Shown in pieces: positions 1-60,616 of a stretch of DNA of 64,000 nt; position 1 is the first letter of the stretch, and every line of letters starts with the position of its first letter. The notes beneath the pieces are model-generated. The model made no database searches. It saw only the letters and a program-made list of their open reading frames with translations, and was not told where the DNA came from. Origin of the DNA: Anthoceros angustus. Taxonomy: Eukaryota > Plantae > Anthocerotophyta. Made by a program: the position numbers and the translations under genes. The DNA lies in the NCBI GenBank assembly GCA_010909165.1, contig VJWM01000202.1:186001-250000 (forward strand). The letters run 5' to 3'.

Positions 1-487
1 ATCGGCAGCAGTGATGCCTGCATCGCTCGGATAGAAGCATCCAAATCCGCTACAACTGATCTCAATGCATCTCGCACTGCACCTGACTCTTCCAGCTGCG
101 TACGAAATTGTTCAAACAGCGAATCCATCCCAGAAATGCTGCCTAAACGACCGAAAGCTCGCTTGCCGCTTCTTCAGTGTGGATTTCGACCCCCACCGTC
201 CCAGCATTCGGTTCGTAAAACGAGACGCTGAATGTATAACCTTTATTTGCAGTCTAATAACGAATGGCCCGAAAGACTGCAAAACAGGAAGCCTGGCACC
301 GAGCCCTCCGCACTCGCCGCAGGTCCGTCTTTTGGTGCATGCGGTATTTGACGTTCTGCCCCGGTAATCGCTCGTAGCTTTGATGTTGGATGCGCCCCCT
401 TTTGTTGCTGATTTTCTTCGTGGTTGCTTTGATGAGGAACAGCGAAGGACGTGAAGGGGGATCCAGCTGCTGTCCAGGAAGGGCGTG

Positions 488-6500: not shown

Positions 6501-9431
6501 AGTAAGAAGCCTTTCATCCATGATTACCTTATGACCATCAGGTTGTTGTACAGCATAAATCAATTCAACATCATCATCTGATGCTTTTTCTAAATGGCCT
6601 GAAATACTAGTGGCACCATCTTGAGGGAGAACTTGATTAATAACACGTGCCCTCATAGCTCTTGGGGATAGCCCTATAATTTGGATGCCCTGAATAAAAA
6701 TGGTGTTCTAGTCATTAACATGCAAAGGTATTTACAAAGATTATTTATCAAAATATGAAGGAAAACATGTAAACCACTAATATGAAAGCATACAAGAGGT
6801 CGCACAACATGCTCATCATCTGTTGTAGGTGAGATTTGAGAAGTAGGCCAATTAGCGATAATTTGTCCATCATCGTCGGCCATAGGCATCTTTGACACTT
6901 TTACCACCATAATGGCAACAAAGATCTGTAGATGGAAAACATGTTTCATGAATTGTTAGCTTTCTTTGTAGATCCTTTATAAATATCAGAATAAAATCAA
7001 TTAAAAATTAAAACTTAGGATGACATGGAATTCTTACTTGATAGCAAAGAAGGATGGAGTAAAGGACAAGTGGAGCAGCACAATTATATTTGTGACATGG
7101 TTGTCTCTTGGCATACACTGCTAGTGATAGCAAGCTAAGTAGAATCTGGGCCACTGAATACTGCACTTACCTCCATCAAAAGATGCACCCAACCAGGGTC
7201 AATATACTTAGCTCAAAGCGTATTAAATTAACTATATAAATAAAATTATGCTCTACAATATTTTACATGTTGAGATACATCATTTTTTTCAAATGAAATG
7301 TATGCAGTTCTATTTACAATACTTTGATAAGAAAAGAGTAAGCCATGGAGATGCTTATGGTTTTAGTCTCTCCACCCAGGAGTTCATGATTTTCATTTTT
7401 AAGATGAGGAACTAAGGCTTTGATAGTGAATTCAATCTGTCATGATCTATACCAAAGGAGCTGAGACTACCAAAGAGGGGATATAGCCTCGCGAACAGAT
7501 GAACGCAACCAGCTCCACTGCTCTGTTAAGCATCATAGGATAAAGGTGCCATGGAAAATAGCTTGCCGTGAATAGCTGGTAGCACAACACTCCAACAATT
7601 TCGATCTATTGAAGAAAATGAGAATGTTTTAGAGTGATAATCGAGATAAAATTTAGTACATAATGTTATCCATCAATGTAAAGATGGTACATTGCTTACA
7701 AGGTCCACTGAGACCAGAAAAGCAAATAAAGCGACCACATATTTGTGAGTTAGAATAATTTGTTGAAATTGCTGGGATTGTTGTTGGGCACCAACATTTG
7801 CTCTCCTTGGCCAAAATCTCCATACTGATGATGATGGCATTCTTTTATCATGAGAATAAATTTTAAATTTAGTATAAGTGAGTCTAGCTGTCAAACTCAA
7901 TAATTACTTGAGATTGTGGACTCCACCTATCACTGCAACACTATTTCATCAAACTTCTAATGTGAAAACAAGCGTAGATATGAGAATCACCATAACTCAC
8001 ACATTTGAAAACATTTCAAAGATTCTCATATTTAAGCTATGGAGATGAAATGACATGTTTGACATGTTTATAACCTCCAATTGATAAGAAGATTTTTTAA
8101 ATTAACAATAAACACATGAAAAAATCAACATTTAGTTCTCCCCATGGATTGTAAAGTTTGATTTATAGAACTGAATACATAGAGGTCTTGCTCAGGGTCA
8201 TGATAGGATGAGTTGGCACAAGATAAAATGTACATGCATACTATTTTAAAATAATAATTTATTAATAGGTGTGTATATGCTGTATATTAAATATCTAAAT
8301 ATCACATCTATGTTTCACTATTATTATCCATATTTTATCCTTATCATAATAATAACTTTGAGCAACGTGGTAAACTGGGAACTCATGTTCAAGAGCATGC
8401 AGGTCCTACGCCAAAGCTTACCATGCTCGCAGACACAATGCTGGGCTTTCGGTTTCCTATGATACAACATTCTTTCGACAACATGTGCCTATTGCCTTCC
8501 AATGAGCACTCACTGCGGTGATCCTTCGTACGGCATCAACACCAAGTGATGCATCGTCTTTTAGTTCAGTTGTATGTAGACCCTTTATTCTTCCTATGTA
8601 CGACATTATCAATGCAATAGGTGACCTTCGGGATGTCCGCTTAACATCAGAAGGACAAGGTTGAAAATGGCTTTTTTGCACAAACCAAGTTTTCTTTATT
8701 TTTCAATGTTATAAAGATTTTTTATTTTCCAAAAAGATTAGGCTCATAGACTTGCACAAGACCTTTCCAACGCACCCAAGCACTACCCATTTGGGTTAAT
8801 TCAGACCACACATTAGGATGCGCTTCTTTCCATCCTCTTCCATATCAAGGTATCAAAATCCATGATTTACGAGATTGGCTGAATGAAAAATATTGCTTGG
8901 CATATCTTCATGATAGTCACACCCAGCCTAGTGAGCACACGGAAAACTAGGAGCTTGTTCATTATGAAAAAAAAAAGAGATACAAGCCTAAACGATTGCC
9001 TTGGCTCCACAACCTCCAACCATGGCCAAACCAAACTAACCACGGCCCGGTCCATGCGAGACCGTCGCACGTGGGTCCATGACCTTTAAGTTTGGCACAT
9101 GAGCCTCCAACCACATAACTTAAAGGCCAATGGAACTCGGTTTGAGCACCCGCTTCTAAACTAGTACACATGAGGGTAAGACGGTTTCGATCAAGGTTTC
9201 GTTGATGTTTTTGGGTCATATTATTAAAAAATTTAAATAAATAATATTGGGAGATAGAGTAGAGAATTTCACATTGAAGGCAAACTTGTGTTGAATTGGT
9301 GTCATACAAATTTTGTTCGAAAAGTGTCGAAAAGGTACTCAAAAACTCGTTTTGAGTAGCATTGTCTTTTTGGGGGTAATTAGTTGCTCTTTTCTTCCAC
9401 GGCTTTTGGGGGTCTCCCTTTGATGTCCTCT

Positions 9432-9632
9432 GCTGGATAGGCTCTTCCCGTCATCTTCTCCCCTCAATAAATATTTATTTCAAGAGCATACTTCATGGCG
9501 AGGTGCTCTTTTCATGAAAGTATAATGAGGCTGGATAGGCTCTTCCCGTCATCTTCTCCCCTCAATAAATATTTATTTCAAGAGCATACTTCATGGCGAG
9601 GTGCTCTTTTCATGAAAGTATAATGAGGCTGG
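9432..9632. repeat. Near-perfect tandem duplication of about 97 bp
   Basis: gctggataggctcttcccgtc...tataatgag occurs twice head to tail. Confidence 0.9.
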
Positions 9633-10263
9633 CATTTTAGAGGGTAACTCTACAGTTCCAATTCTTCTCTTCCTTTGGGGCTAATTTGGGGCTAATTATT
9701 CAAAAGCCGCTTGATATATATTCAGCCGCTTCAAATATTATCATGTTTTGTAGAATGGTACCAAGTTGTTTTTTTAGCGAATTCAAAGACTTTTATAGAT
9801 ATTTCAAAGTGTACATTGAAGTTCCGTACAAGGATTTCATAGGATTAGCCCCGTAGGTGGGCGCACGCATTACGGGACAAGGGCAAGATTATTATATCAA
9901 GCGACACAATAGGACCATGAAATTGGGGATGAATGGCATCTTATCCAAGAACTGAACCAAAGGATACTTAATTGTGGAGTTCCAATGAACTCATGTCTGG
10001 ATGTTAGTGCTTGAAGGGAGAATAATGGGACCAAGTTCACGTCATCCACTTTCCCTGTTGCAATATTGCACCAAAAAGCTCATACATATGTTACTCTGGC
10101 GCACTTTGCGAAAAAATGTCGAGTTGTGCCAGTAGTCATCATAAAGGTATTAATGAGAACGCAAAATGCGAGGACATAGCATGCGAAGGGTGATTGGTTC
10201 AGATCACATTGTCATCCCACTATGTGCTCGCGCCGCACTCCCGTGGGTGCGTTCTTTCGTGCA

Positions 10264-10455
10264 AGGCTACTTTCCCAAAAAGTGTCAAATTTAAAGATTC
10301 ATAAAAAATCAATGGCTACTTTCCCAAAAAGTGAAATTTAAAGGTTCATAAAAAATCAATGGCTACTTTCCCAAAAAGTGAAATTTGAAGGTTAATAAAA
10401 AATCAAAGGCTACTTTCCCAAAAAGTGTAAAATTTAAAGCTTCATAGGAAATCAA
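10264..10455. repeat. Minisatellite, about 50 bp unit x4
   Basis: Unit ggctactttcccaaaaagtg(tc)aaatttaaag.ttcataaaaaatcaa repeated four times. Confidence 0.9.
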
Positions 10456-10590
10456 AGCCTCGAAGAATTTAGGGTTTAGGGCGCACTAGGTAGTGAAGGT
10501 TACTTCTCGTAGTAAAGAATTCTCTCCAAATTATAAAAAAAATAATTTACAAATTTTAACCAATATATTCGGTAAACGTGAAAGAATCTT

Positions 10591-10670
10591 TTAGAAAACT
10601 CACGAACCCCTCAAGAAACGGGGTCCTCATTTAGAAAACTCACGAACCCCTCAAGAAACGGGGTCCTCAT
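10591..10670. repeat. Tandem duplication of about 40 bp
   Basis: tagaaaactcacgaacccctcaagaaacggggtcctcat occurs twice. Confidence 0.9.
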
Positions 10671-12196
10671 GCATGCGATGGGTCCAGATTTTTGGTGCAT
10701 TTAGAAAGAGCTTTTCTTGGAATATGGGCCTAATTATTTTCAGAAAAAAATAATATACTTTGAGAAAACGTATTTGTTAAAAGGTAGTTATTTTCTGAAA
10801 AACGTAGTTCAAGAAAATGTAGCACTGGGATGAGGCAGTGTAGGCCAAAGCTCGGTGGAGTTTAAACGCATTTGTGCAGCTACTTGGGCCGCCCCCGATT
10901 TTGGCTGGCTGTCTCATTTCAAAGTTCAAGATCTGAGGCGGTTCCGTGCTTAGGTCCATACAACAGCAGTGGAGGTGGAGTTGAGGTGTAAAAGATCCTT
11001 TCGTGTTGGTGGAGAGTTTTTACGTTTTTTCTTGTAAAGTGACCACGCTACAAGAACAAGAGTACGGAATTATGCACCAAAAGATACCTTAATATGAACT
11101 CTTGTCATAACTTTTTTGTCCAAGAAAAAGCAAAAAGAGGGGCAAAGGCTCATATTCGGATCCTTTGTCATTCTGGGGTTAAGCTTACACTATTCCCTTT
11201 GCTTGGCCTTTAGGCGGCCTACAACCTATATTAAATGGGGTATATAGAGTGGGTATTTTGATTGATATTTGATTGGGGTGCTTACAGATAGCCTTCATAC
11301 AAGTAGCTAAGATACACCATGGCAGGCATTATTACAAATAACAACTTTATCAACTCCTACTTTTAAATCCATACTTGATTGAGGTGTCTAAAGGGGGCAT
11401 TTAGATTGATACCTGAATGGGGTGCCTAAAGATGTTGTGTGAAAGTAGTCTAGATATATCAGCCTTCATACACCATGGTTTAAGTTATCCTTGCACCTTT
11501 ATTACAAAAAACAAGATGCCCATGTACCAAGTCCAATGATGGAAAGGTTAGTGGACTTAAATAGAATTTTTCTAGCTTCTTGTTAAGGTCATGTTGACTA
11601 TCCACATCCAATATAGTCTTAGTAAAAGGAATAAAAAATTAATAAAACCTCATCCGTGAACTTCTTGCAACACAACTTAAGCCTTTTAGGTCATAAAGAA
11701 GAAAGAAATGAATATATATTTACAAAATATATTTTGTTGGATCCATTCAATAAAATAAATGAAAGCAAAGCAATGTACAGTTTTAAGATAACTAAGAGAT
11801 GAAAGATGAGCTATTTTGGCTAGAAAGCTATTGTATCTCTTGGAAAAAACTATTCATGCTAGTACATCTAGTGTTCCTACCACATACTAGATACTAAAAA
11901 GTATAGTATAATGGTTTATAAAAAATTATTAAATTTCAAACAATACCTATATTACTATCTTTAAAATAAAATTTTAATTAAAGATACTCATCGACTAGGA
12001 CATTACAACATTTCACATGAGTTGATATATAAAAAGAAGAATTTATTAAAGCCCGCTAAGGACGGATTTTCATCATATGATTGATAAGAAGTCAAGAGTA
12101 GGATAAAAGATATAGTATAAGAAGTACAATATAAACTAAAAATCATCAAACATGCCTAGTAATATATTTTAAAATAATTACTTATAATACAAGAGA

Positions 12197-12880
12197 ATGT
12201 CACTCCATGAGGATATTCCAATTTTGAAAAGTTATGAAGATTATTTAAATAATTTTATTTCTGAAAAGGATATGAAGTTTCTAGAAGATGAAAAATTAGC
12301 TCGTTTATTTATGGAACATGGAGTCACTAGGCACATAATAATATCTAGGGAGGAATTCCATAGGCTGAAAGGTTCAGAAGAAATAAACCAGAGAAAGAAA
12401 CTCGGCATTCCACATACCTCACTCCCATTTGGAGAAAAACTAGAAAATTGGCCCCTATTAGACGCAATAGCTCAAAGAGAGCAAAAGATAAGTGACAAAG
12501 AATTAGCTACTATAATATTTATACGCCTCTTTCATCCTAAAGGCTTCTCAATCTCTGGGTATATTGATCTGGCACATCGGTTTCAATCACATAACTTTGA
12601 TCGTGTTTTAGAGCATAGAACTAAACTTTGTCCCAAACCATCCGATCTCTCGTACTACAATTTTCGCACCAAAGCTGTGCTTACTCAATCATCTTGCAAC
12701 TTTGAAGTATTAACAACCATAGAGACACTTATGTTCCAGTGTAAGCTGGATAAGAAGATTATCAATCCAAATCCAAATGCACAACCTGATCATTTGACTA
12801 CGCGTGCACGCATCAATGATCCTGAATACGAAAGTATTGTGTTCTTTGACCACCATGTGAGGAATGAAATTCTACCCTAA
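12197..12880 (+). CDS. CFAP299: Cilia- and flagella-associated protein 299 homolog (C4orf22/DUF4464), intronless
   Basis: 227-aa ORF with family-typical segments SYEDYLNNFISEKDMKFLEDEKLARL, LATIIFIR, ISGYIDLAHRF, PKPSDLSYYN and VFFDHHVR. Confidence 0.88.
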   Translation: MSLHEDIPILKSYEDYLNNFISEKDMKFLEDEKLARLFMEHGVTRHIIISREEFHRLKGSEEINQRKKLGIPHTSLPFGEKLENWPLLDAIAQREQKISDKELATIIFIRLFHPKGFSISGYIDLAHRFQSHNFDRVLEHRTKLCPKPSDLSYYNFRTKAVLTQSSCNFEVLTTIETLMFQCKLDKKIINPNPNAQPDHLTTRARINDPEYESIVFFDHHVRNEILP

Positions 12881-13183
12881 TTAGAATAGAAACTTTAAAT
12901 GAAGCCAAGGGGAAAGAAAGCTACTAATGAGACATACGCAGAAAAGCTTTCTAAGGAGTGCTTCGAAGGTTTTTTTTGTTTTTAGTGGTAAACCTTTTTT
13001 TGTTTTTAGTGGTACCTAAATCTTTTTAGTGCTTCTAAGCCTTTTGCCTATTTGGACTCTCTAAGTATTTTCTTTCAGGATACTCATTTATGTTCTCTTC
13101 CATCATGTGCTTAAATATAAAGAATTTTCTATGAAAAATTTGCCCTTCACATATGCCGTGAAAGATGAAAAGAGGGAAGTAGA

Positions 13184-13532
13184 TGTGGTGCCTTGCTCCT
13201 AGGTGGCCCCATTGGTGGGTCATACGCTAGGTAGCATCGTTGAATCCTTGTGGTGCTCCTTGCTCCTAGGTGGCCCCATTGATGGGTCAAACGGTAGGTA
13301 GCATCGCTGAATCCTTGTGGTGCTCCTTGCTCCTAGGTGGCCCCATTGGTGGGTCAAATGGTAGGTAGCATTGCTGAATCCTTGTGGTGCTGCTTGCTCC
13401 TAGGTGGCCCCATTGGTGGGTCAAATGGTAGGTAGCATCAAATCGGTGAATCCTTGTGGTGCTCCTTGCTCCTAGGTGGCCCCATTAGTGGGTCAAACGG
13501 TAGGTGGCATCATTGAATCCTTGTGGCTCCTT
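13184..13532. repeat. Tandem array, 67 bp unit, about 5 copies
   Basis: Unit tgtggtgctccttgctcctaggtggccccattg.tgggtcaaa.ggtaggtagcatcgctgaatcct; copies start at 13249 and 13316 (67 bp spacing). Confidence 0.92.
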
Positions 13533-13894
13533 CGGGTCCTTTGGAAAGATTCAACTATCCTTCAATCTGTTTTTGACTTGGCATCAGGAAACGTTTGAAG
13601 GCGAACGACCTCCAAACCCATCATTATCTTGACCCCTTTAGACCACCTAATATCTCATTACTTTACCGGTTAAGAACCTATTCCATAGAGCAATCTTAAA
13701 GAAATGCCTACGAGCAGGGAGCATCTAATACTTTCCAAGCCATCCGGCTTCTTACCATCAGGTCTATGATCCGAGTCAGTTTAGATTGCGACACACTAAT
13801 ACATATAGGTTCTCCAGTCCATTGCAGCTTCCTAAGCTCTTGATGCATAGCTCTAACTTTAGTACATGTTTACAAATGCTCGCAAAAGAAGTGT

Positions 13895-15625
13895 ATGTGG
13901 AGACTTTATAAAAAGAACGAGATGGGAAACCCCATCTACCTTGAGGCGAAAGGGGACAATCCACGATGGGGCTCCAGGAGGGGAGGGCGTGCCCCGCTGG
14001 CCCTATAACCCCAACCGCCCCAAGATGTCGCCGTCCAAGATAGGGAAGGGCCTACTTACCATTGGTGCCGCCGATGTCGCGTCTCCAACACTCATGATCG
14101 TCCTAAAGATGGCGTTGGCCAACGCCCTTTGCAAGGCGATGGAAAGGCGTTGCCTGAAATATGCCATGACACTGGAAAGGGGGAGGCCAACCCCGCCCCT
14201 GTCATTGTGGTAGGCCCTTGCGCACTCCTTGATGAAACGAGGAAAAACCTTACCCAAGGCCCATGGGTTTCAATGGCAAGGGGGATAAAAATGCGACCTT
14301 GCTGAATGCAGTACTTGTAAATTCTCTTAGTTGCGCTCCCTTCTGCTACCCGACCTGGAGGGTTGATGATGACATGGTCACTAACAGAATCTCTGGTTGG
14401 GTCAGTGGCAACCACATCTGCAACCGAGACCTCATCCCTCGCATCAAGAGAAGGTCAGCTCTGATAGAGACGCCATTGAGCAGAGTATACTGCCGCTCCT
14501 TGAAAGGGAAATTGATGGGGGCTAAGATGATCCCAGAATTGCTCATTGAGCTGGATGGCAATGCTGCGGCTAACAAGATGTAGGAATGCCTCTCCCACGG
14601 CGATAGGGCGCACCCCCAATGTGGGCTTCTCCATACCCAAAAGCCTGCTAGCCCCCAACACCCGTGGAATCCGATGGGGAGTCTCCCCCCACGCCACAGT
14701 CACCGCAAAGATAAAGAGCTCCGAAAAACCACTAGAAGGATTCTCAGGAGAGGAGTAGTCACAAAGGTGATCATAGAGAGTTCCAGAAAGACCCCCAGAA
14801 GAGAGCCGTGGGGTGGTAGTTAAAGCGTGACCAAAAACCACCTTGTCCAAACAGAAGGGCTCCTCAACCGCAAACTCCAAGATATCCGATGGGATGGGAT
14901 ATCTAGAGCCGGGTGAAGGGCCCGAAGAACTGCAATAGTCTCCTCAGACGTCGGAGCCACCAGCTCTGGTCAAAGGGCCCGGGCAGCCCTAGCATACTCG
15001 CATGCGCGACCAAGCAGGAGGCACCTTTTGGAGACACGCCTTCACGGGGTATTGACAAACCTGATCAAGCTTAGCCGACTCTAACCTCAATCGAGTAGCA
15101 TAGCCACCCTGTCCTGAAGAGCTTGCCAGTCCCCGACCTGGAAACGGTGAAGCTGGGAGGCAACCTCCCTGTGACCTGAATTCCCACCTCTAGAGCGACG
15201 AAGACACCATCAGAGAAGAAAAAGGAGAAAAGTCCAGGCTGCTTCATCTTGAGAGTTTTATGCGAGGCGCTCCAAGGGAAGCCTATATGGCAAGCGGACA
15301 TCGTCTTGTAGTTGATGGGGGAGACGTCGGAAAAGGCGGTATCTTGGGGGACGCATATCATAAAGAGCCAAAAGATGATCAAATTGTGCCCACAACCACT
15401 GCCAAAACTCTGGCGGAGGCTCTAGGGAAGCAATCGGATGTGAGGAGGAAGGGGCAGCAATGTCGAAAGATGTAGCCCTCACCTGAGCCTCCCATGCATT
15501 TCGGTCAAAGTCCTTGTGCATCAAGCCCATGTGTCTCTTTGCACCAACAATATCCTTATATAAAATTCCGCAGACGGGGCAAGTAGTGTCCTTCCAGAAG
15601 CGGAAGAAGGAGGCCCCATGGAAAA
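13895..15625 (-). mobile_element. CRE-like (RLE-endonuclease) non-LTR retrotransposon, degenerate and internally deleted
   Basis: Minus-strand remnants: N-terminal C2H2 finger CPVCGILYKDIVGAKRHMGLMH, RT N-terminal motif GVRPIAVGE...HLSPHQF, and RLE region RADL..VADV...FIPLAIETHG...YFRQRLSIALQRALA. Contains stops and frameshifts. The 3' UTR is shared with the 26.9-28.2 kb copy. Confidence 0.8.
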
Positions 15626-40842: not shown

Positions 40843-42801
40843 TCACTGCCCTTGCATCTCCTGGCGCAGCATGTTCACCATGGGTTGGTTCCCTGCAGAC
40901 ATGTTCAAGCTGACTAGGAAACGCAGGATGTTTGCGTTTGGGTTGCAGCCGTTCGCCTTCATGAGATTGTAGACGGACATAGCTTGTCTGGGACGGTTGG
41001 TTTTGTGGTAGATCCGGATCATTGTCTCATAGGCTGGTAGGTGGTTCCTGTAGCCCTTCTTCGAGATCATACGGCGGAATAGACGCTCACAAGCCAAGTG
41101 CTGGCCTGACCGGAATAGGACATAGAGCATTAGAGTGTGAGAGTTCACTGATATGGGGCAGCCTGATATTTGCCAGTCTTTCATAAGGTGGACTGCATCT
41201 TCCCACTGCTCGGTGTTGATGTAAGCGATCATCACTGCAGAGTAGCAGTCTTCGCTGACAGACAAGCCGTGCTGCCTCATTGTGGCCATGAGCTGAGCTG
41301 CCTTTTTAGGATGGTTGGCCTTACAGTACATCTGCAGCATTGTCCAGAAGACGATCTTATCTGATGCCGAGCCAGACCGGCAGAAGTCCTGAAAAGCCGA
41401 TGTTGCCTCATCCACCATGCCTGCCTTTGCAAAAGCATGCAACATTGTGTTGTACGCTGTGGCGTCTGGCTTCAGCCCCTCCTCCTGCATACTTTTAAAC
41501 AGGGCAGCTGCCTCTGCTGTCTTCCCGAACTTGCCATAGAGGTCCAAGAGAATGCTTGCTGGTACATGGTTCCGTGGAATTGCAGAGCTCTTCAGCTCTG
41601 TGAACAGCCTTGCTGCCCCTGTCACATCTCTAGTGTCTCGGCATGATGACAAGAGATGGCAGAATGTGAACAGATCTGGAGAGATGCCACACCCTACCAT
41701 TTCCTGGAAAGTGGAAAACACTTTCTCATGCATTTTCTTCTTCAAGTACGCATGGATGAGTGTGTTGTAGACTATCCTATCTGGATGGCATCCGAATTCT
41801 TTCATCATACGAAACCACTTCTCACACACGTCCAACCTGCCTGCATCACTGGCTTCCTTCATTATCCTGCAATAGAATTTTGCGTCTAGCGGCAATTGAT
41901 GTTGCCTCATGTCGTCCACCAGCAGCTCTAACCTTTCCCATTCCCGCGTTGCTAGTAAACGTCTATGTGTTGCAAGGCACACAAGCAAGTCAGGCTTGTG
42001 TTTCGACTCCTTTCGTATCCAAATATACAATGGGAACACCGTGCGATCTGGAACGGACTTGAGTAAGACTATGTAATCCCTTGCAGAAAGCTCTGCAGGT
42101 AATCCCTCCAGAGTGGAGATGAGGTCCTCTGTGTGTCGCAACCCCTCTCCAGCCTGCAGAACTTCTTTCAGGGAACGTTCAGGCATGTCCTCGGAGCCTC
42201 CTTGTGTGCGAACCAACGGTGACAACGGGTGATCCCCATTCTTAAGATCTTGAGAACTCGAATCTGGCCCCTTGTGAAGAGAAACCTGTGGAAGTCCCTC
42301 GACGCTTCCGTCTGCACTACTCACAATTATCTGATCAGTCGAAGAAGAAAGACTTGTTAATTCCTCCCCTGCCTCCACATTCTTCGAATGGGGTGGACGC
42401 AGTTCGACAATCTGCTGAGACTCTACCGATCCTTCCGCTATCTCTGCACTTGCTCCCTCGTCTTCGATGAGGTGCATGCTGCGTGTTTTCCCTGTTCGAG
42501 GATCCGATCTCAAATGCTCTGACCACGTTTCCCAAGGCCGCTGCCTATCAATTCCCCGAGGTGAAAAGTATCCTCCAAGTGGTACCCCCAGCTCCTCCAA
42601 AACAGATCCTGCCCTAGCCATGAAGGGCGCAACATACAAAGTCTTCCAGCACCCTGCGGGTGAGCGAAGTCTGTATGCCAATTGCGTGCATGACGTCAGA
42701 GAGAAATGGTTCTGTATAGTGCACAGATACTGCGGAACCAGCAGGCATTGCTTGGCAACCCACACTCTCCAAATGCTGTTGAGCAGCTGAGTTCCGGCCA
42801 T
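40843..42801 (-). CDS. P-class pentatricopeptide repeat protein (about 652 aa, organelle-targeted)
   Basis: Single exon with about ten 35-aa repeats (PDRIVYNTLIHAYLK, PDATAYNTMLHAFAKAG). The ATG at 42801 follows a probable 5' UTR intron acceptor (ttcttacag). Confidence 0.9.
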   Translation of the reverse strand: MAGTQLLNSIWRVWVAKQCLLVPQYLCTIQNHFSLTSCTQLAYRLRSPAGCWKTLYVAPFMARAGSVLEELGVPLGGYFSPRGIDRQRPWETWSEHLRSDPRTGKTRSMHLIEDEGASAEIAEGSVESQQIVELRPPHSKNVEAGEELTSLSSSTDQIIVSSADGSVEGLPQVSLHKGPDSSSQDLKNGDHPLSPLVRTQGGSEDMPERSLKEVLQAGEGLRHTEDLISTLEGLPAELSARDYIVLLKSVPDRTVFPLYIWIRKESKHKPDLLVCLATHRRLLATREWERLELLVDDMRQHQLPLDAKFYCRIMKEASDAGRLDVCEKWFRMMKEFGCHPDRIVYNTLIHAYLKKKMHEKVFSTFQEMVGCGISPDLFTFCHLLSSCRDTRDVTGAARLFTELKSSAIPRNHVPASILLDLYGKFGKTAEAAALFKSMQEEGLKPDATAYNTMLHAFAKAGMVDEATSAFQDFCRSGSASDKIVFWTMLQMYCKANHPKKAAQLMATMRQHGLSVSEDCYSAVMIAYINTEQWEDAVHLMKDWQISGCPISVNSHTLMLYVLFRSGQHLACERLFRRMISKKGYRNHLPAYETMIRIYHKTNRPRQAMSVYNLMKANGCNPNANILRFLVSLNMSAGNQPMVNMLRQEMQGQ

Positions 42802-43331
42802 TGCGATGACTGTGTCAACCTGTAAGAAAGCCCTAAGGCAAACATCCGTCTTCCCAGACAACAGAGCAGAAACATGATCTCCACATGTTATTCCTGCAGG
42901 AATCACTCCAGGATTTCCGTGTTCGATGATCCATCGTACCCTGTAACAAAACAGGTTTTTGGGTGTAAAAGTCTCAAATCCTCTAACATGCAAGCGGTGA
43001 GGGGGCCTCTTCTGCTCCAAGCAAACCTAAAGCCGCATAGCCGCATGGCGTGGACGAGAACATCGGGAGCTGCAGCGCAATACGTGGCAATAGTTTCTTA
43101 AAATAGCAAAGCTTTAAATCCTGGATTACCTCCGCCAAGCGGGAAGCGGGGACGACGTTGCTGCCGAATTTCGATGTATTAGAAGGAGGAGGCAAAAGGT
43201 GAGGAACAATCTGCACAGGGCGCGCATCCCACGTTCCTTTCTGTTTGGAATCCGATAGATCTCAACACTTCTACTATACAGTACAGAGCATCCTGCACAG
43301 TTACCACTGCTGATTTCTGTTGAAAGCATTG

Positions 43332-49666: not shown

Positions 49667-52468
49667 TCAACCGGCCACATGTCCTGCTGCGTCGGATCCA
49701 TTGTTGGGTCCGTCAAATGCTCGCAATGTTTTCATGCCGGTATGTTGTTTAAGGCCGATAGCCAGCATTTCGCCGTGTCCACACAAATGATCCGTTCTAT
49801 CATCGGATAAGTCTGCCGGTGCCAGGGCCACATGTGGCACACACCTTTCGTTCTTCATTTTGGCAAAAATCTGTTCCAGCCTTGCTTGACTTTTGGGATG
49901 CTTCGTGTGTCCAGCCACAAAACTGTGAACGAGTCCGTCTTTCTCTGTCCACCAGCTCTGGGCCGGATCCTTCCATGCCCTGATTTGTACTCTCCTTGAC
50001 TTCATCTCGTGTGCCAAATCCCACATCTGGGCACTCTTGTATATGTTCAACATCAGCACATATGCTGCGGCATCTTTCTTGTCTAGCTTCACAGCTTGGT
50101 CGAAAGCATGGCGTCCGACCTCCACATTGCCCCACTTTTGACAAGCACCCAACAGAGTGTGCCAAACTGCAACGTCAGGCAGTACAGGCATTCTCCTCAC
50201 CAAAGCTCGTGCCTCATCCAGCCGGCCTGCACGGCCAAGGAGATCCACCATGCATGTGTAGTGCTCTACCGTGGGGCTGATCCTGTAGAGTCTCCTCATA
50301 TCCTCGAAGTATTCTTGCCCCTTGTCTACGAGACCCGTATGACTGCATACCATTAATACACCAAGGAATGTGAGGCCATCTGGTTGTATTCCATCCTCGC
50401 TCATTTTGAAAACCATATCAAAGACCACCTCGCTGCCTTGGCGGCTGTACCCAGCGATCAGTGCATTCCAGGCGACGAGGTTTCTTTCGGGTAATGCATC
50501 AAACACCTGCTGTGCATCAACCATGCTGCCAGACTTTCCATACATGTTTATCAGACTCTGGGCTATAAACAGAGCACCAACAAGCCCTTGTTCTTCAATC
50601 TGTGCATGTAGCTGCCTTCCCAGATGCAAAGCTGCAACATCTGCACATGCCTGCAGGAGGCACACAAATGTGATGGAGTCAGGTATAGCCATGCCATTTT
50701 CTTGCATAGCAGTATAAAGACGAAGGGCTTCCAGACCCTTGCCCTGCTGGGAATACCCTGCTATCATGGCATTCCATGTTACCACATCCTTCTGACCCAT
50801 TCCGTCAAACACTGTCTGCGCATCCTCGAGGCTGCCACACTTTGCATACATGTTCACCAAACTGTTGGCAACAAACAGATCGACTTCATGTCCTTGTTGC
50901 CTGATTTGCGCATGGAGCTGCTTCCCCTTCTCCAGAGCTGGGGTGCCCACACTTGCACATGCCTGCAGGAGGCGCACAAATGTCACAGTATCGGGTACAG
51001 ACATGCCTTCTTCTTGCATCGCACTGTAAAGGTTAAGGGCTTCCTGCCCCATGCCCTGCTGGGCATACCCCGCTATCATGCCATTCCACGTCACCACATC
51101 CTTCTGACCGAGTCCGTCAAACACTTTCTCAGCATCCTCTATGCTACCACACTTCGTGTACATGTTTACCAAACTATTGGCTACAAACACATCAGCTTGA
51201 TGTCCTTGCTCCCTGAGATGTGCATGAAGCTGCTTCGCCGTCTCCAAAGCTGGAGCACCCACACTTGCGCAAGCCTGCAGGAGGGACAGAAATGTCACGG
51301 AATCAGGTGCAGCGAGACCACCTTCTTGCATAGCACGGTAAAGATGAAGGGCTTCCTGCCCCATGCCCTGCTGTGAATACCCTGCTATCATGGCATTCCA
51401 TGTCACTACATCTTTTTGACCAAGTCCTTCAAATACTCTTTGGGCATCTCCCAAGCTCCCACACTTCGAATACATGTTTACCAAACTGTTGGCTACAAAC
51501 ACATCACCTATGTGTCCTCGTTCTGTAATTTGCGTATGAAGACACCTGCCCGTTTCCAACGCTGGGGCACCTACAGTTCCACATGCCTGCAGGAGGCACA
51601 CAAATGTCACAGAGTCGGGTACGGCCATACCTTCTTCTTGCATGGCAATGTACAGACCAAGGGCTTCCTGCCCCATGCCCTGCTGGGAATACGCTGCTAT
51701 CATGGCAGTCCATGTCACTACATTTTTTTCACTAAGCCCGTGAAACACTCGCTGGGCGTCTTGCAAGCTGCCGCACTTTGCATACATGTCCACCAAGCAA
51801 TTACAGACGAACACATCAGGATCAACCCCACTGGCCAAGACATCAGCATGTACCTGCTGCCCAGCTTTCAAGTCTGCTCCCCTTGCACAAGCCTGAAGGG
51901 CTGCCACAAATACATGGCCATCCGGCTTAACACTTGTTCTGCGCATCCCATGGTACAGTTGGATGGCCTGCTTGGCTTGTCCATGCTTAACATGTGCAGA
52001 AATCATGGAAGACCACATGAAGGCATCTGGGGTGGTGACCATGGTGAATACATCCATCGCGTCTTGCAACCTGCCATGAGAAGCGTACATGCGCAGAAGG
52101 TGGTTGCAAAGGAACCTGTCTGACTGGTACCCCTTCTGCACCGTAAAAGCATGGACGCGGCGACCCAGAGCAAGATCTTTCTGTGCTACACATTTCTTCA
52201 GGACAGCATAGAAGAGAGACTTGAGAATAGAACCGTCTGTCTCCACCAGGACACCCAAAGCCTCGACAGCCTCGGTGAGACTTCCCCCATCACATAGTGC
52301 GCTCACAGTTTCAGCCGTCACGGTGCCTTCGTGTCCTGCAGACCCACGAGGGTTCGCATCATCCAGCCTGCATTTGGGATCAGGACGTAGCGACGACCCT
52401 CGCTGGAAGATCCGTCTCCAGCCCGACAGCCTCTTGGACGCAGTGGCTTTCTTGTAGAGGTGGTGCAT
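49667..52468 (-). CDS. PLS-class PPR RNA-editing-type factor with E1/E2 and a truncated WW-type DYW domain
   Basis: 933-aa single exon with P-L-S triplets, HYTCMVDLLGRAGRL, WHTLLGAC, AYVLMLNIY, KDPAQSWWTE..GLVHSFVAG and HLCGHGEMLAIG. Confidence 0.92.
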   Translation of the reverse strand: MHHLYKKATASKRLSGWRRIFQRGSSLRPDPKCRLDDANPRGSAGHEGTVTAETVSALCDGGSLTEAVEALGVLVETDGSILKSLFYAVLKKCVAQKDLALGRRVHAFTVQKGYQSDRFLCNHLLRMYASHGRLQDAMDVFTMVTTPDAFMWSSMISAHVKHGQAKQAIQLYHGMRRTSVKPDGHVFVAALQACARGADLKAGQQVHADVLASGVDPDVFVCNCLVDMYAKCGSLQDAQRVFHGLSEKNVVTWTAMIAAYSQQGMGQEALGLYIAMQEEGMAVPDSVTFVCLLQACGTVGAPALETGRCLHTQITERGHIGDVFVANSLVNMYSKCGSLGDAQRVFEGLGQKDVVTWNAMIAGYSQQGMGQEALHLYRAMQEGGLAAPDSVTFLSLLQACASVGAPALETAKQLHAHLREQGHQADVFVANSLVNMYTKCGSIEDAEKVFDGLGQKDVVTWNGMIAGYAQQGMGQEALNLYSAMQEEGMSVPDTVTFVRLLQACASVGTPALEKGKQLHAQIRQQGHEVDLFVANSLVNMYAKCGSLEDAQTVFDGMGQKDVVTWNAMIAGYSQQGKGLEALRLYTAMQENGMAIPDSITFVCLLQACADVAALHLGRQLHAQIEEQGLVGALFIAQSLINMYGKSGSMVDAQQVFDALPERNLVAWNALIAGYSRQGSEVVFDMVFKMSEDGIQPDGLTFLGVLMVCSHTGLVDKGQEYFEDMRRLYRISPTVEHYTCMVDLLGRAGRLDEARALVRRMPVLPDVAVWHTLLGACQKWGNVEVGRHAFDQAVKLDKKDAAAYVLMLNIYKSAQMWDLAHEMKSRRVQIRAWKDPAQSWWTEKDGLVHSFVAGHTKHPKSQARLEQIFAKMKNERCVPHVALAPADLSDDRTDHLCGHGEMLAIGLKQHTGMKTLRAFDGPNNGSDAAGHVAG

Positions 52469-56453: not shown

Positions 56454-56802
56454 CTGCGTCACGTGGCCGCCGACGTGGACCAAGGTGGAGTCCTGCCAAG
56501 ACGATTCTTTTTTTTTTCCTCCCCTTTTTCTTTGGCGCAAAAATTGCCAAGACGATTCTTGACGGAGAGTCTGGGTGCAGAAGCAGAACGACACTGCTCT
56601 CCCGTTCTTCGCATGCTTTCTCCTTGCTGCGGGCCTGTCTCTCGTCCCAGCGCATTGCTTCTTGCCGACTCTGGAAAATTCGAGCAAGGACGGCACTCCG
56701 TATCCCAACATGGGGCGGAGGACGATTCTTTGAGCATTTCATTATCTGCTGTTCCTGCCAACGGCAAGGATTGATTGGGAGATACGAGTCCCGATTGGCA
56801 GG

Positions 56803-59800
56803 ATGGCGTCTGATACAGTTCCCCCTTCAGCCCCCGAGTTGATTCAACATCCTGGAAATGATCTTGCGCTGCGAGGTACGGGCCTGTATCTCCTGGACAG
56901 ATTCACGGGGAGGGAAAAAAGCGCACACTCTGTATGCTGCCTTTGGCGGGACGCTCAGGAAGCAGCGAATTGGTGCTGAATGCACCACCAGCTGATTCGC
57001 GCGGGTTCTGACAGACTGTTTCCACTGCGTGCAGAATGGATGGAGTGCCCGGTTGCTGGCCATCCACTTGAGGGAGTGGTGTCTTCGAAGTGTCCTCTTA
57101 GCAAAGCACTAAACAGCACGCTGGTCCCTCAATTGCGTTATTCCGGTGTGGAGTTGATTTCTCAGCAGAGGGGTCTTGGGCGCGAGGTGGCCCTCTCCTT
57201 CCTTCAAGAGAGCCCATTTGGTTTAGTTTGTGGTGGGAATGCGTGAATGCGTTTCACGGGCTGCATTAACCGCATGCTTTTGCAGGTGGGTATGGTGATT
57301 GATCTCACTGTGGGTGACAAATCCTGTTCCTCGGAGGACTGGAAGGCGAGTGGAGTTCAGTACGTGAAGGTACTGATGCCAGTTGAAGGGATTGCATTCG
57401 TTTCAAAAGCCTTTCTGCCCTTGTTTCACGTCTTGACGATTGAGGAGCTGGTTGCAGATACCGTGTACAGGGAAGCAGGAAGTGCCGGATCCAGTGTCGG
57501 TCAACAAGTTTGTATATGAGGTACAATCATTGGCAGGCAACCACCCTGAGCGCTTGTCAGGTTCAACTTTTTCACTTCGTCGCTCTTTTCTGGATGCAGG
57601 TTGTGAAATACTTCTGTGCTAACAGGCAGGATGGAGGTACGAAGACCAAATGTATTTTGGTTCACGGCATCCATGGTTACAACCGCTCGGGCTTCATGAT
57701 TGTCCACTACCTAATGCGAGCCCGAGGTGGCAAACTGGCAGAGGTCGGCAAATGCTGCCTGCTGAAAGCGTCTTGATGCCCCGGTGCTGTTGGTTCTAAA
57801 AGGCAAGAGTCAATCCCGTTGCTTGGTTGAGACTCTGACAGCAGTACCTGCTTGAGCAGGCTCTCCAAGCTTTTGCATATTCAAGGCCTCCGGGTATATA
57901 CAAACAGAAGTATATTGATAGTTTGTTCACTTTCTACAATGCACGACATGGTACTACCTTCATATGTCCAAAGAAGCCTACCTGGAAACATTTTGAAGAA
58001 CGTGATTCAGAAATTCCCAGTAAAGAATCTGGTGTGGATACGGAGGACAACTCGTCAACCTTGCAGGTTTGTTGTCCTCAGGTATCACCAAAGTTTGTCC
58101 CCTATATCATATCACACTTGTGCTTACTTAGCTATATGATGTGACATGCAGGCATCTCCCGACGATGTTTTGGGCGATGCCATACCTGAGGAGTACCAGT
58201 TTGAGATGCAAAAGATCTGTTATTGGGCTCTTGAGCTTGAGCTGGTAAGATGTACTTTTGGTAGTGCTGAGGCTTGGCACTCCAATACAGTATCTTGTAC
58301 TCGTTCTTTAGCTGTGCCAGTTATATCTGAGAGTCTAAAGCCAGGTGGTGGGAAGTGTGACAGTCTTCAAAGCATTCTTGTTCATCTTCTGCTTGAGTTT
58401 CCCCTCACTAGGACTGGATGTTGGGGACGGGCAGGGAAGACGCAGCGTGACACTGAAAGCATCTGCTTGTCAGCCTTTCATGGTATTGGGATGCTGACAC
58501 ATATTTACGGCTTGGGCAGCCTTCAGGCCAAGGGAGGATGATATCTCCGCAATCAGTGCCATTGTCGTTGAGCAGGTATGATCCTCCTGACCAGCGTTGG
58601 CAGCTCTTGGTATTGTGGCTTGCAAGCCAGAATGGTAGTGTACTTGAGAATGGAAACCGTCAACTTGCTCTGGATGTGGTTTGCAGAGCTCACTTGGATG
58701 GTGTACTCCTCCAGAGATACTATCGAACAACGTGGAAACCAGTAGCAGCGCGCTACATGCTGCTCATATGTCGCGATGGATGCTATCTAATCGACGCAGA
58801 TTTCCAGTTCAGAAGGGTGGAGATGCGTTTTCCCCGTCCCCGCAAGGTAACTAGTGTCTGCTAGGTTTTGGTTTTTCCATAGTTGAGCATGTTGTTCTGC
58901 TTGCTCATATAGTTCTTTTGGCAGGGCTCCTCAGATGGGAGAGTTAGAACTCATCACTATACCCTCCTTGATGGTGAAATGGTACTGGATACCGATATAA
59001 ACTCCAACCAGATCAGGAGATTTCTTGTTAGTGACCTTTTGATGCTCAACAAAGAACATACGAAGAACGTATGTCCTACGCAAGCTTTGTCCCCGACAGT
59101 GGCGCTCTTGCATACTTCATTTCGTAGTTCATTCACCTTTTGTGCCTTTTGTGCAGATCCCTTTTCATGTCAGACACCAGTTGATTGAGGACGAAATTAC
59201 GGCCCCTCGAAATGCTGAGGACCAAGCAAACAAAGATTATTATTACAACAAGGAGGCCTTTAGGGTGGGTTAATCCTTCCTGGTTGCCATCATTCATCTG
59301 TACATCCAGGACAGCTTCGTAAATCCTTTATCTGTTTGTACTGATACAGGTCAGACGAAAGTATTTCTATAATATCTCTTCGATGAAAAATATGCTTCAA
59401 GAATTCATTCCCAAGCTGTCTCATCCTGCCGACGGAGTGATATTCCAAGTAATAAGTATATTGTTACGATTAAGGCCAACTGTAAATGCCCTTCTAAGGA
59501 ATCTGAACATTTCTCTGCATGCTGTCTTGGGCAGGATTGGGATGGACCGTATGTCACAGGACCAGGTGAAGGGTTTCTTCAGTGGAAGTTCATGCATCAC
59601 ATTGATTTCCTGCTGAAGGTGCTCAAGAAACCGCCCGTGGATCTGGAGCATTTTTCTGACCGTAGACCATGCTTAGTTCTCTTGTGACCTGCTTCACTAG
59701 GTTTCACCCGGTCAAGGCCAACCGCATGTCTATTTGGTGGAAGACGGGGACAAATTAAAGGAGGTGGCAGTCAAGCTTCTGACGTTTCCTGGTAAGCTAC

Positions 59801-60219
59801 TTCCTCAGATCGTTTCACCTCACAAGCTGTCTCCACTCCTCCTTTGCGTAATTCCTCTTTCTGAATAGAATCTGCGGATGGACAAAAGCTGTCCGACAAG
59901 GTTATCAAATGTGCGTGGCATCCCATTGAGAAGAACTGGAAAGTTTTGGACACGCAGACAGGAAAGAAAACGGCAAGTTCCTGGACGGAGTACCAGAAGG
60001 TATGTTAGGTCTCTCGAACTCCGAACAAGAAACAGTGCTTCTTGGCATGACTACCCTGAGAAGCCCAGTTAAGCTTCAAACTCCGTTGCATCACAGGTTC
60101 TCGAGATGGTTGCTAAAGACATATCTCAGACAAGCTTGATTGCTGATCTTGCGAACCTGTCCAGGAGCCGCCTCTATGTTGCCAGAGACCGCCCCTATGC
60201 CGAAGTTCAGAAACGCTGA
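56803..60219 (+). CDS. mRNA capping enzyme homolog (cysteine-phosphatase-type triphosphatase plus guanylyltransferase plus OB fold) with degenerate active sites, 16 exons
   Basis: WMECP, SKCPL, GMVIDLT, VHGIHGYNRSGFMIVHYL, RPPGIYK, DDVLGD, TWKPVAARYMLLI, TLLDGEMV, LSHPADGVIFQ and FLQWKF. All exons join in frame at GT-AG boundaries without stops. Confidence 0.88.
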
Positions 60220-60616
60220 ACTACTTCAGGGACGTACGCGTAGACCCTCCCTGAAGATCATTCGGCTTCACTGGATGTAGGTAGATACTCCCTTGCTGCA
60301 TGCCACTGGTGCAATCATAAATCATCCTGGGGTAGAAAGCCACAAATCACCGCATCCCACTGGGGTTTGTTGGAAAGTCACAAATCGCTGCATCCCACTG
60401 AGGTTTTTGGGAAACGGGTGAACTCTAAGGAAGACACTTGATCACCATGTCCAACTCCTTGCTCAACGAGTCTAACTGCTGCCCCTGCTCACCGTGTCCA
60501 ACTCCTTGCTCAACGTGTCCAACCCCTGCTGTTCATCTAGTTGTTCTTGCATATTAGTTGTCTTCTGCTCCATACTTTTTGCATATGAGTTATCTTCGGC
60601 TCCATATTGAGGTCTC

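What the first reader, a model, noticed from the sequence alone, without database searches (positions are those of the whole stretch)
56803..60219. Intact 16-exon mRNA capping enzyme paralog with both catalytic centres degenerate (candidate pseudo-capping enzyme)
Seen: 16 exons splice into one uninterrupted frame with the full triphosphatase-guanylyltransferase-OB architecture. The P-loop reads HGIHGYNRSG (GGC at 57666-57668). Motif I reads WKPVAARY (58733-58756), motif V reads FLQWK, and the motif VI region reads WKVLDTQTGKK. Motifs III (LLDGEMV) and IV (DGVIF) are kept. Known: plant and animal capping enzymes need HCxxGxNR (nucleophile Cys), KxDG, KWK and RxDK. Inference: several catalytic residues were lost in two separate domains with no frame or splice decay. 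This argues for a selected non-catalytic role, such as a substrate-trapping 5'-triphosphate RNA binder, a Pol II CTD/Spt5 scaffold, or a decoy that regulates capping. The motif I Lys is retained.
Basis: partly seen in the sequence, partly recalled or inferred. Interest (0 to 1): 0.85.

Follow-up and report, generated by a model that had tools for sequence, protein, structure and literature searches.

The report
Dead capping-enzyme paralog in a hornwort
A land plant, probably a hornwort, carries a transcribed and evolutionarily constrained copy of the mRNA capping enzyme that has lost the key catalytic residues of both its activities, so it most likely works as a non-catalytic binder or regulator; most of the RNA copies seen are spliced in a way that cuts the protein short.

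Summary
Sixteen GT-AG exons (56803-60219) join into a 603-codon open frame with triphosphatase, guanylyltransferase and OB parts. The P-loop has Gly (GGC 57666-68) where ten streptophyte enzymes have Cys. Motif I is KPVA instead of KADG, motif V is QWK, and motif VI lacks both Arg and the Asp. Motifs III and IV are kept.

RNA contigs from this species and three relatives (90-97% identical) confirm 13 introns directly and intron 2 indirectly. The visible substitutions in exons 1-9 are 17 synonymous to 10 non-synonymous, a ratio of about 0.17. So this is not a neutral pseudogene.

On a tree the protein sits at the base of land plants on a branch about 11 times the median length. Degenerate paralogs arose independently in Ranunculaceae, in a Withania-like lineage and in one unnamed lineage.

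Two caveats remain. The exon 7/8 junction that the full frame needs was not among the joints shown. The relatives' contigs use upstream acceptors (58356 or 58364) that bring in early stops through an unusually conserved 164-nt stretch. Also, I could not look for a canonical capping enzyme in this genome, because the databases hold no proteome of this lineage.

Most likely it is a maintained pseudo-capping enzyme with much unproductive splicing. Any role as binder or decoy is inference.

The parts
56803..56875 (+). exon 1 (ATG at 56803)
   Evidence: The joint 56875|57035 is seen in X1 and X2 contigs, and the 5' UTR is covered back to 56589.
57035..57186 (+). exon 2
   Evidence: The X2 contig's own coordinates imply the junction to exon 3.
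57286..57369 (+). exon 3 (DLTNT.RYY of canonical enzymes reads DLTVGDKSC here)
   Evidence: The joint 57369|57458 is in X2 and X3. The X3 contig lacks 57286-57336.
57458..57520 (+). exon 4
   Evidence: Joints on both sides are seen in X2, X3 and X15.
57600..57743 (+). exon 5, with the triphosphatase P-loop VHGIHGYNRSG. Gly codon GGC at 57666-57668 replaces the Cys nucleophile.
   Evidence: Pfam DSPc, E 1.1e-6. It aligns to the P-loop of DUSP11/PIR1 structures. All other rows that cover this stretch have Cys there except P0040 (Met). Contigs of X2, X3 and X15 cover it, and no difference is listed at 57666-68 (the list was incomplete).
57860..58066 (+). exon 6 (RPPGIYK motif kept; acidic linker)
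58152..58244 (+). exon 7
58356..58519 (+). Alternative 5' extension of exon 8, inside predicted intron 7. It brings in early stop codons and is the best conserved DNA of the locus.
   Evidence: The acceptor is 58356 in the X2 contig and 58364 in X15 and X3. Differences: 1 in 217 nt plus a 1-nt deletion (X2), 2 in 153 (X3), 5 in 209 (X15), against 4-6% in the other pieces. Stops read: TGA at 58539 via acceptor 58356, TGA at 58394 via 58364. No Rfam match and no unusual fold.
58520..58575 (+). exon 8, short form, as needed for the 603-aa frame
   Evidence: It aligns to the canonical FPGSQPVSLDR stretch. Its acceptor TTGGGCAG is the same as that of exon 13. The junction 58244|58520 is not among the joints shown.
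58687..58846 (+). exon 9, with motif I WKPVAARY at 58733-58756. The Lys is kept; Asp is now Val and Gly is now Ala.
   Evidence: Pfam mRNA_cap_enzyme, E 3e-9. It aligns to WKADGTRYM of mouse 3rtx. 119 of 132 database representatives read WKADG.
58925..59068 (+). exon 10, with motif III LLDGEMV (58964-58984) and motif IIIa FLVSD
   Evidence: aligned to human 3s24 and mouse 3rtx.
59157..59264 (+). exon 11
59350..59448 (+). exon 12, with motif IV DGVIFQ (59431-59448)
59535..59618 (+). exon 13, with motif V FLQWK (59574-59588); the first Lys is now Gln
59701..59791 (+). exon 14 (OB part)
59869..59999 (+). exon 15, with the motif VI region WKVLDTQTGKK (59937-59969). R.R.DK has become D.Q.GK.
   Evidence: Weak mRNA_cap_C match.
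60097..60219 (+). exon 16 and stop codon TGA
   Evidence: The 3' UTR is covered to about 60560 in X1.

Best explanation
This is a real, expressed, selectively maintained and fast-evolving copy of the plant-type bifunctional mRNA capping enzyme in a land plant that is probably a hornwort. It keeps the triphosphatase, nucleotidyltransferase and OB folds, but it can no longer carry out either step of capping. The cysteine that attacks the gamma-phosphate is a glycine. The guanylyltransferase has lost the Asp and Gly of motif I, a Lys of motif V and the Arg and Asp of motif VI. Shown: the sequence, the transcription and splicing, the constraint on the protein, and the long branch. Inferred: it acts by binding rather than by catalysis. 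The triphosphatase half is built like the pseudophosphatase STYX (Cys to Gly in an otherwise kept HxxxGxNR(S/T) loop), so it may still hold a 5' phosphate end. The guanylyltransferase half may still dock where the real enzyme docks on the transcription machinery. Either way it could compete with or assist the canonical enzyme. Output appears to be limited by alternative acceptors in intron 7, which add a highly conserved 156-164-nt stretch with early stops. This resembles a poison-exon switch and would leave at most a truncated protein with only the triphosphatase-like part.
For: The frame and all 15 GT-AG introns are intact. Single exons match the expected domains. The catalytic positions are changed at columns that are invariant in ten canonical enzymes, while 118 of 169 invariant columns are kept, with similar shares in both halves: 36 of 52 in the triphosphatase part and 64 of 89 in the guanylyltransferase part. 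Spliced RNA contigs exist in four species. The visible substitutions are 17 synonymous to 10 non-synonymous, giving a ratio of about 0.17. Exons 9-10 differ from organism B by 8 of 308 nt, against 5.6% or more in the UTR-containing pieces. The terminal branch is 2.2 against a median of 0.19, inside the land-plant clade. Intact degenerate paralogs exist independently elsewhere, and the Ranunculus and Aquilegia copies share a common stem, so dead copies can persist for a long time. The STYX precedent of Cys to Gly is described in PMC8269279. The requirement for the Cys and for the motif VI Arg is described in PMC2904801.
Against: The junction 58244|58520 needed for the full protein was not among the joints shown. 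The contigs of three relatives carry the stop-containing extension. The organism C contig also lacks part of exon 3 and retains intron 11. The substitution count rests on 27 visible sites in exons 1-9 out of about 130 differences, so selection on the guanylyltransferase half is shown only by low divergence. RNA of this species itself does not cover the Gly codon. No binding, activity or localisation data exist. A canonical paralog in this genome was not found because it could not be searched for.
Confidence: 0.55

Rival explanations
1. The working product is only the front half. The stop-containing splice form is the main mRNA and yields a protein of about 280-330 residues with only the dead triphosphatase-like domain. 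The guanylyltransferase exons are then translated rarely or not at all.
For: One continuous 1778-nt contig in organism B runs from the 5' UTR through exons 1-7, the extension and exons 9-12. The same kind of extension appears in organisms C and D, and the depth bins of this species fit it. All 27 visible substitutions that give the low ratio lie in exons 1-9, and 26 of them lie before the stop.
Against: 313 codons after exon 8 are still open with all splice sites intact. They keep 64 of 89 invariant guanylyltransferase columns. Exons 9-10 diverge less than the UTRs do. This pattern is not expected of long-untranslated sequence.
Confidence: 0.17
2. This is a duplicate gene in decay. It is still transcribed but makes no useful protein, and the open frame is a leftover.
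For: Many catalytic residues are lost in both domains. The branch is very long. Unproductive splice forms, a missing exon part and a retained intron appear in the relatives' contigs. Depth is low.
Against: The excess of synonymous changes: under neutrality about 21 of 27 should be non-synonymous, but 10 are. There is no stop, frameshift or broken splice site over 1812 nt despite about 56-60% amino-acid divergence from canonical enzymes. Structural motifs are kept.
Confidence: 0.15
3. The protein is still an enzyme with altered chemistry. For example, it could be a nucleotidyltransferase that uses the retained motif I Lys with another nucleotide or substrate.
For: The motif I Lys and Arg, the motif III Glu, the motif IV DG.IFQ and the second Lys of motif V are kept.
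Against: The Asp and Gly of motif I, a Lys of motif V and the Arg and Asp of motif VI are invariant in canonical enzymes and are changed here. A motif VI Arg-to-Ala change alone abolished activity in a related enzyme (PMC2904801). The phosphatase has no Cys in its loop.
Confidence: 0.08
4. This is the only capping-enzyme gene of the organism, and the odd residues are assembly errors or are tolerated.
For: No canonical copy was seen, but none could be looked for.
Against: Contigs of three other species align across the P-loop and motif I exons, and no difference is listed at those codons. The changes number 51 of 169 invariant columns, not one or two. Capping is essential and needs the Cys (PMC2904801).
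Confidence: 0.03

Closest known systems
Metazoan/plant bifunctional mRNA capping enzyme (human RNGTT, mouse Mce1; PDB 3s24, 3rtx; canonical plant enzymes such as Sphagnum P0281)
   Same: The domain order is the same: cysteine-phosphatase-type triphosphatase, nucleotidyltransferase and OB. Identity to land-plant enzymes is 40-45% over about 580 residues. Motifs III and IV, RPPGIYK and DGCYLID are kept.
   Different: Cys is Gly in the P-loop. KADG is KPVA. KWK is QWK. R.R.DK is D.Q.GK. The roughly 85-residue basic N-terminal extension is missing. The branch is about 11 times longer.
STYX-type pseudophosphatases
   Same: The nucleophilic Cys is replaced by Gly in a P-loop that otherwise keeps His, Gly, Asn, Arg and Ser/Thr (PMC8269279).
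   Different: STYX is a stand-alone dual-specificity phosphatase homologue that binds phosphoproteins. Here the loop belongs to an RNA 5'-triphosphatase domain fused to a second dead enzyme. Binding was not tested.
Degenerate capping-enzyme paralogs in angiosperms (Ranunculus P0038, Aquilegia P0050, Withania-like P0083, unnamed P0040)
   Same: They are full-length proteins on long branches with damaged P-loop and/or motif I, V and VI. They show that dead copies recur and persist.
   Different: Their origins are independent, inside the angiosperms, and their substitutions differ. For example, the Ranunculaceae copies keep the Cys but lose the P-loop Arg and the motif I Lys. I found no paper that describes any of them.
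DUSP11/PIR1 RNA 5'-triphosphatase
   Same: It is the best solved-structure match of the P-loop exon, and it belongs to the same cysteine-phosphatase RNA triphosphatase group.
   Different: DUSP11 is a single-domain active enzyme. The matching chains have Ser where this protein has Gly.

Membership tests
Metazoan/plant-type mRNA capping enzyme (active enzyme) | Domain order: DSPc-type triphosphatase, then mRNA_cap_enzyme nucleotidyltransferase, then OB C-terminal domain | tested here: met
   Pfam on single exons: DSPc 1.1e-6; mRNA_cap_enzyme 3e-9, 7.8e-7 and 1.8e-4; mRNA_cap_C 0.059, which is weak. Collinear alignment with ten canonical enzymes.
Metazoan/plant-type mRNA capping enzyme (active enzyme) | P-loop HCxxGxNR(S/T) with the Cys nucleophile | tested here: not met
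   The loop reads HGIHGYNRSG with GGC at 57666-68. The Cys is invariant in the ten canonical enzymes.
Metazoan/plant-type mRNA capping enzyme (active enzyme) | Motif I KxDG | tested here: not met
   It reads KPVA: the Lys is kept, Asp is Val and Gly is Ala.
Metazoan/plant-type mRNA capping enzyme (active enzyme) | Motifs III (LLDGE) and IV (DGxIFQ) | tested here: met
   LLDGEMV and DGVIFQ are present.
Metazoan/plant-type mRNA capping enzyme (active enzyme) | Motif V KxK and motif VI RxDK | tested here: not met
   QWK in place of KWK; DTQTGK in place of R.R.DK.
Metazoan/plant-type mRNA capping enzyme (active enzyme) | Triphosphatase and GMP-adduct activity | not testable with these tools
   This needs recombinant protein.
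STYX-like pseudophosphatase | Cys replaced by Gly, with the rest of the phosphate-binding loop kept | tested here: met
   H, G, N, R and S are kept. Three relatives have Thr at the last position through 57687 T>A.
STYX-like pseudophosphatase | Binds its phosphorylated ligand without turnover | not testable with these tools
   This is inference only. Note that the neighbouring DLTNT.RYY motif is also changed.
Neutral pseudogene | Frame or splice-site decay, and dN/dS near 1 | tested here: not met
   There are no stops and all introns are GT-AG. The visible changes are 17 synonymous to 10 non-synonymous, but this is a partial list.
Gene controlled by unproductive (poison-exon-type) splicing | An alternative splice form that brings in an early stop, with the alternative segment conserved beyond neutral | tested here: met
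   Acceptors at 58356 and 58364, with stops in every frame used. Differences are 0.5-2.4% there, against 4-6% elsewhere.
Gene controlled by unproductive (poison-exon-type) splicing | Both forms are made, and the stop-containing form is sensitive to nonsense-mediated decay | not testable with these tools
   Only contigs could be laid, and only once. The productive junction was not among the joints shown.

The most novel reading that the evidence does not exclude
Plants have repeatedly turned spare capping-enzyme copies into non-catalytic regulators of capping. This hornwort copy would be a maintained example. It would hold 5'-triphosphate RNA ends or the enzyme's docking site on RNA polymerase II, and it would be dosed by its own conserved stop-bearing splice switch. 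That would be a layer of control over the first step of mRNA processing that has not been described.
Probability: 0.2. Interest if true: 0.75.

Novelty: new variant of a known kind. Interest (0 to 1): 0.5.

Why it matters
Capping is treated as a constitutive, unregulated step. A conserved dead copy of the capping enzyme would point to regulation by competition or scaffolding at the 5' end of nascent RNA. It would also add RNA-end enzymes to the list of families that give rise to pseudoenzymes. Hornworts can be transformed, so a knockout is feasible. The independent dead copies in Ranunculaceae and other angiosperms offer natural replicates. If the gene turns out to be a slowly dying duplicate, the result is ordinary.

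Tried and rejected
- The HMMER search of 1.84 billion representatives with exon 9 found no ortholog. The best hit was 69% identical, and none had the KPVA motif I.
- The profile search with the triphosphatase half plus exon rows (A2) found no near-identical protein.
- The search with the Spirogloea enzyme gave liverwort, moss, lycophyte, fern and seed-plant enzymes, but none attributable to a hornwort.
- The window's NDUFV1 ORF has no hit above 93% identity. The database therefore lacks this lineage, and the blanks above mean nothing.
- An exact look-up of a PPR ORF from the window gave nothing.
- Earlier notes of the scan hold no capping-enzyme gene elsewhere in this genome. The operators state that such blanks are uninformative.
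- A1 and A3, alignments of exon pieces to a full-length enzyme, were too poorly aligned to use.
- An Rfam scan and a fold of the conserved intron-7 stretch gave no RNA family and a z-score of 0.36. An embedded structured RNA is therefore not supported.
- The idea that the exon-8 extension codes for protein is rejected. Organisms A/D and B/C differ there by a 1-nt indel, and every frame used hits a stop.
- Literature searches found no paper on a dead capping-enzyme paralog in plants.
- The joined 603-aa model was never sent to a search, fold or look-up tool because it has no reference. Structure prediction, atlas search and exact look-up of the whole protein were therefore left out.
Full report
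**Anatomy**

I read 56500-60500 and rebuilt the gene model in a script from window coordinates. The exons are: 56803-56875, 57035-57186, 57286-57369, 57458-57520, 57600-57743, 57860-58066, 58152-58244, 58520-58575, 58687-58846, 58925-59068, 59157-59264, 59350-59448, 59535-59618, 59701-59791, 59869-59999 and 60097-60219.

All 15 introns are GT..AG and 77-275 nt long. The phases fit, and the CDS has 603 codons plus TGA with no internal stop. A tblastn search of the model against the window finds no second copy in the 64 kb.

The joined protein has no reference. I left out every step that would have needed the joined sequence in a search, fold or look-up tool. The joined translation existed only inside local scripts, where it was used for alignment, local BLAST against proteins already fetched, and a tree.

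**Domains and motifs**

Single exons hit Pfam DSPc (exon 5), mRNA_cap_enzyme (exons 9, 10, 12) and, weakly, mRNA_cap_C (exon 15).

- The P-loop exon aligns to DUSP11/PIR1 structures.
- Exon 9 aligns to WKADGTRYM of mouse capping enzyme 3rtx.
- Exon 10 aligns to motifs III and IIIa of human 3s24.

I aligned the model with ten canonical streptophyte enzymes (Chlorokybus, Spirogloea, Sphagnum, two liverworts, a lycophyte, a fern, Ginkgo, Vitis, Glycine). 169 columns are invariant among the canonical enzymes. The model keeps 118 of them and changes 51. The changes include:

- the P-loop Cys (now Gly) and the residue after it;
- DLTNT.RYY, now DLTVGDKSC;
- FPGSQPVS;
- KADGT, now KPVAA;
- the Tyr of motif IIIa;
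- KWK, now QWK;
- the two Arg and the Asp of motif VI.

Motifs III and IV, RPPGIYK, DGCYLID and FRRV.MRFP are kept.

The mechanism that makes these residues essential is described in PMC2904801. The Cys attacks the gamma-phosphate, the six motifs form the GTP site, and a motif VI Arg-to-Ala change abolishes activity.

**Expression and splicing**

One reads call was allowed. It laid contigs of four runs. X1 is 99% or more identical to the window and so is the same species. X2, X3 and X15 are three differently labelled organisms at 90-97% identity. Their kind was only guessed to be RNA, but the spliced joints show it.

Thirteen of the 15 introns appear as exact GT..AG joints. Intron 2 follows from the record coordinates of the 1778-nt X2 contig, which runs from the 5' UTR to exon 12.

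The exception is intron 7:

- The X2 contig enters at 58356.
- X15 and X3 enter at 58364.
- The depth bins of X1 fit a piece covering 58355-58514.

In the window's sequence, the 58356 acceptor runs into TGA at 58539 and the 58364 acceptor into TGA at 58394. Organisms B and C carry a 1-nt deletion at 58375, which shifts to a frame that ends at 58495.

So this extension does not code for protein. Yet it is the best conserved DNA of the locus. It differs at 1 of 217 nt plus the indel (X2), 2 of 153 (X3) and 5 of 209 (X15). The other pieces differ at about 4.1%, 4.2% and 5.8%. It has no Rfam match and no unusual fold.

The X3 contig also lacks the first 51 nt of exon 3 and keeps intron 11.

**Selection**

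The reads table showed 40 of about 130 differences. Of these, 27 lie in exons 1-9. Seventeen are synonymous and ten are not, in a CDS with 3.55 non-synonymous sites per synonymous site. That gives a ratio of about 0.17. Under neutrality about 21 of the 27 should change the protein.

One change, 57687 T>A in all three relatives, turns NRSG into the canonical NRTG. No difference is listed at the Gly codon or in motif I, but the list is incomplete.

For the guanylyltransferase half I have only divergence. Exons 9-10 differ from organism B at 8 of 308 nt. The 5' UTR-containing piece differs at 5.6%, and the piece covering the end of exon 16 and the 3' UTR at 6.6% plus gaps.

Both halves keep similar shares of the invariant columns: 36 of 52 in the triphosphatase part and 64 of 89 in the guanylyltransferase part. 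The C-terminal tail is the most decayed part.

**Relatives and placement**

An HMMER search of 1.84 billion representatives with exon 9 gave 132 hits. None exceeded 69% identity, and 119 of them read WKADG. Whole-length identity to canonical enzymes is 40-45%. Canonical streptophyte lineages are about 47-48% identical to each other.

A maximum-likelihood tree puts the model inside the land-plant clade (support 93/91). It lies outside ferns plus seed plants, unresolved against the lycophyte and the moss-liverwort group. Its end branch is 2.2, against a median of 0.19.

This is the position expected of a hornwort gene. Earlier notes of the scan call the genome very probably a hornwort. The window's PPR genes (one with an E motif) show only that it is a land plant, and I could not confirm the hornwort label by a named hit.

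**Other degenerate copies**

The same search turned up other degenerate full-length proteins:

- Ranunculus cassubicifolius P0038 and Aquilegia coerulea P0050. Both have lost the P-loop Arg, and motif I reads SAVG or NAVG. They share a stem of 0.52 in the tree.
- A Withania-like cluster, P0083.
- An unnamed cluster of ten transcript-derived proteins, P0040, with Met in place of the Cys and KAKG in motif I.

These lie within the angiosperms and are independent of the hornwort copy.

**What could not be done**

The protein databases hold no proteome of this lineage. The window's conserved NDUFV1 ORF has no hit above 93%. Neither the orthologs seen as RNA contigs nor any window protein appear.

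The absence of a canonical hornwort capping enzyme is therefore uninformative. The key refuting test, whether this is the only capping-enzyme gene, remains open.

I infer that a canonical gene exists. Capping is essential, and this protein lacks the nucleophile of the first step and several residues of the second.

**Verdict**

The best reading is a maintained, catalytically dead capping-enzyme paralog. Its triphosphatase half is built like STYX, with Cys changed to Gly (PMC8269279). Its expression passes largely through a conserved, stop-bearing alternative splice form.

Whether the full-length protein or a truncated front half is the working product is untested. Whether it binds RNA ends or the polymerase is also untested. 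I found no paper describing such a paralog in the literature I could search.

Noticed in passing
window 59846-59870 joined to 60125: Contigs of X2 and X3, at about twice the depth of the rest of the gene, join the end of intron 14 (plus one extra C) to a point 28 nt into exon 16. This skips 254 nt with non-canonical TC..AT ends. It may be a second, truncated copy or a rearranged allele in organisms B and C.
   Followed up: no
window 57286-57336 and 59265-59349: The organism C contig (X3) lacks the first 51 nt of exon 3, which would shift the frame, and it retains intron 11. So the transcripts of this gene in that species look poorly processed.
   Followed up: no
window 485-1948 (+): An uninterrupted 487-codon ORF encodes a complete 51-kDa subunit of complex I (NDUFV1: Complex1_51K, SLBB and NADH_4Fe-4S domains). 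The best database identity is 93%. The gene appears to have no introns.
   Followed up: partly
window 49667-52468 (-) and 40843-43020 (-): Two long single-exon PPR genes. The first has an E motif, which marks it as an organellar RNA-editing type.
   Followed up: partly
proteins P0038, P0050, P0083, P0040, P0027, P0041, P0048: Capping-enzyme homologues with damaged P-loop and/or motif I occur in Ranunculus, Aquilegia, a Withania-like lineage and unnamed transcriptomes. The two Ranunculaceae proteins share a common stem in the tree, so that dead copy is old.
   Followed up: partly
window 6001-14000: An AT-rich block (GC 36-40%) in a window that is otherwise 45-57% GC. It was not examined.
   Followed up: no
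window 57821-57871: An X2 contig of much higher depth (95) matches only this 51-nt stretch across the intron 5/exon 6 border and runs on into unrelated sequence on both sides. It is probably a short shared repeat.
   Followed up: no
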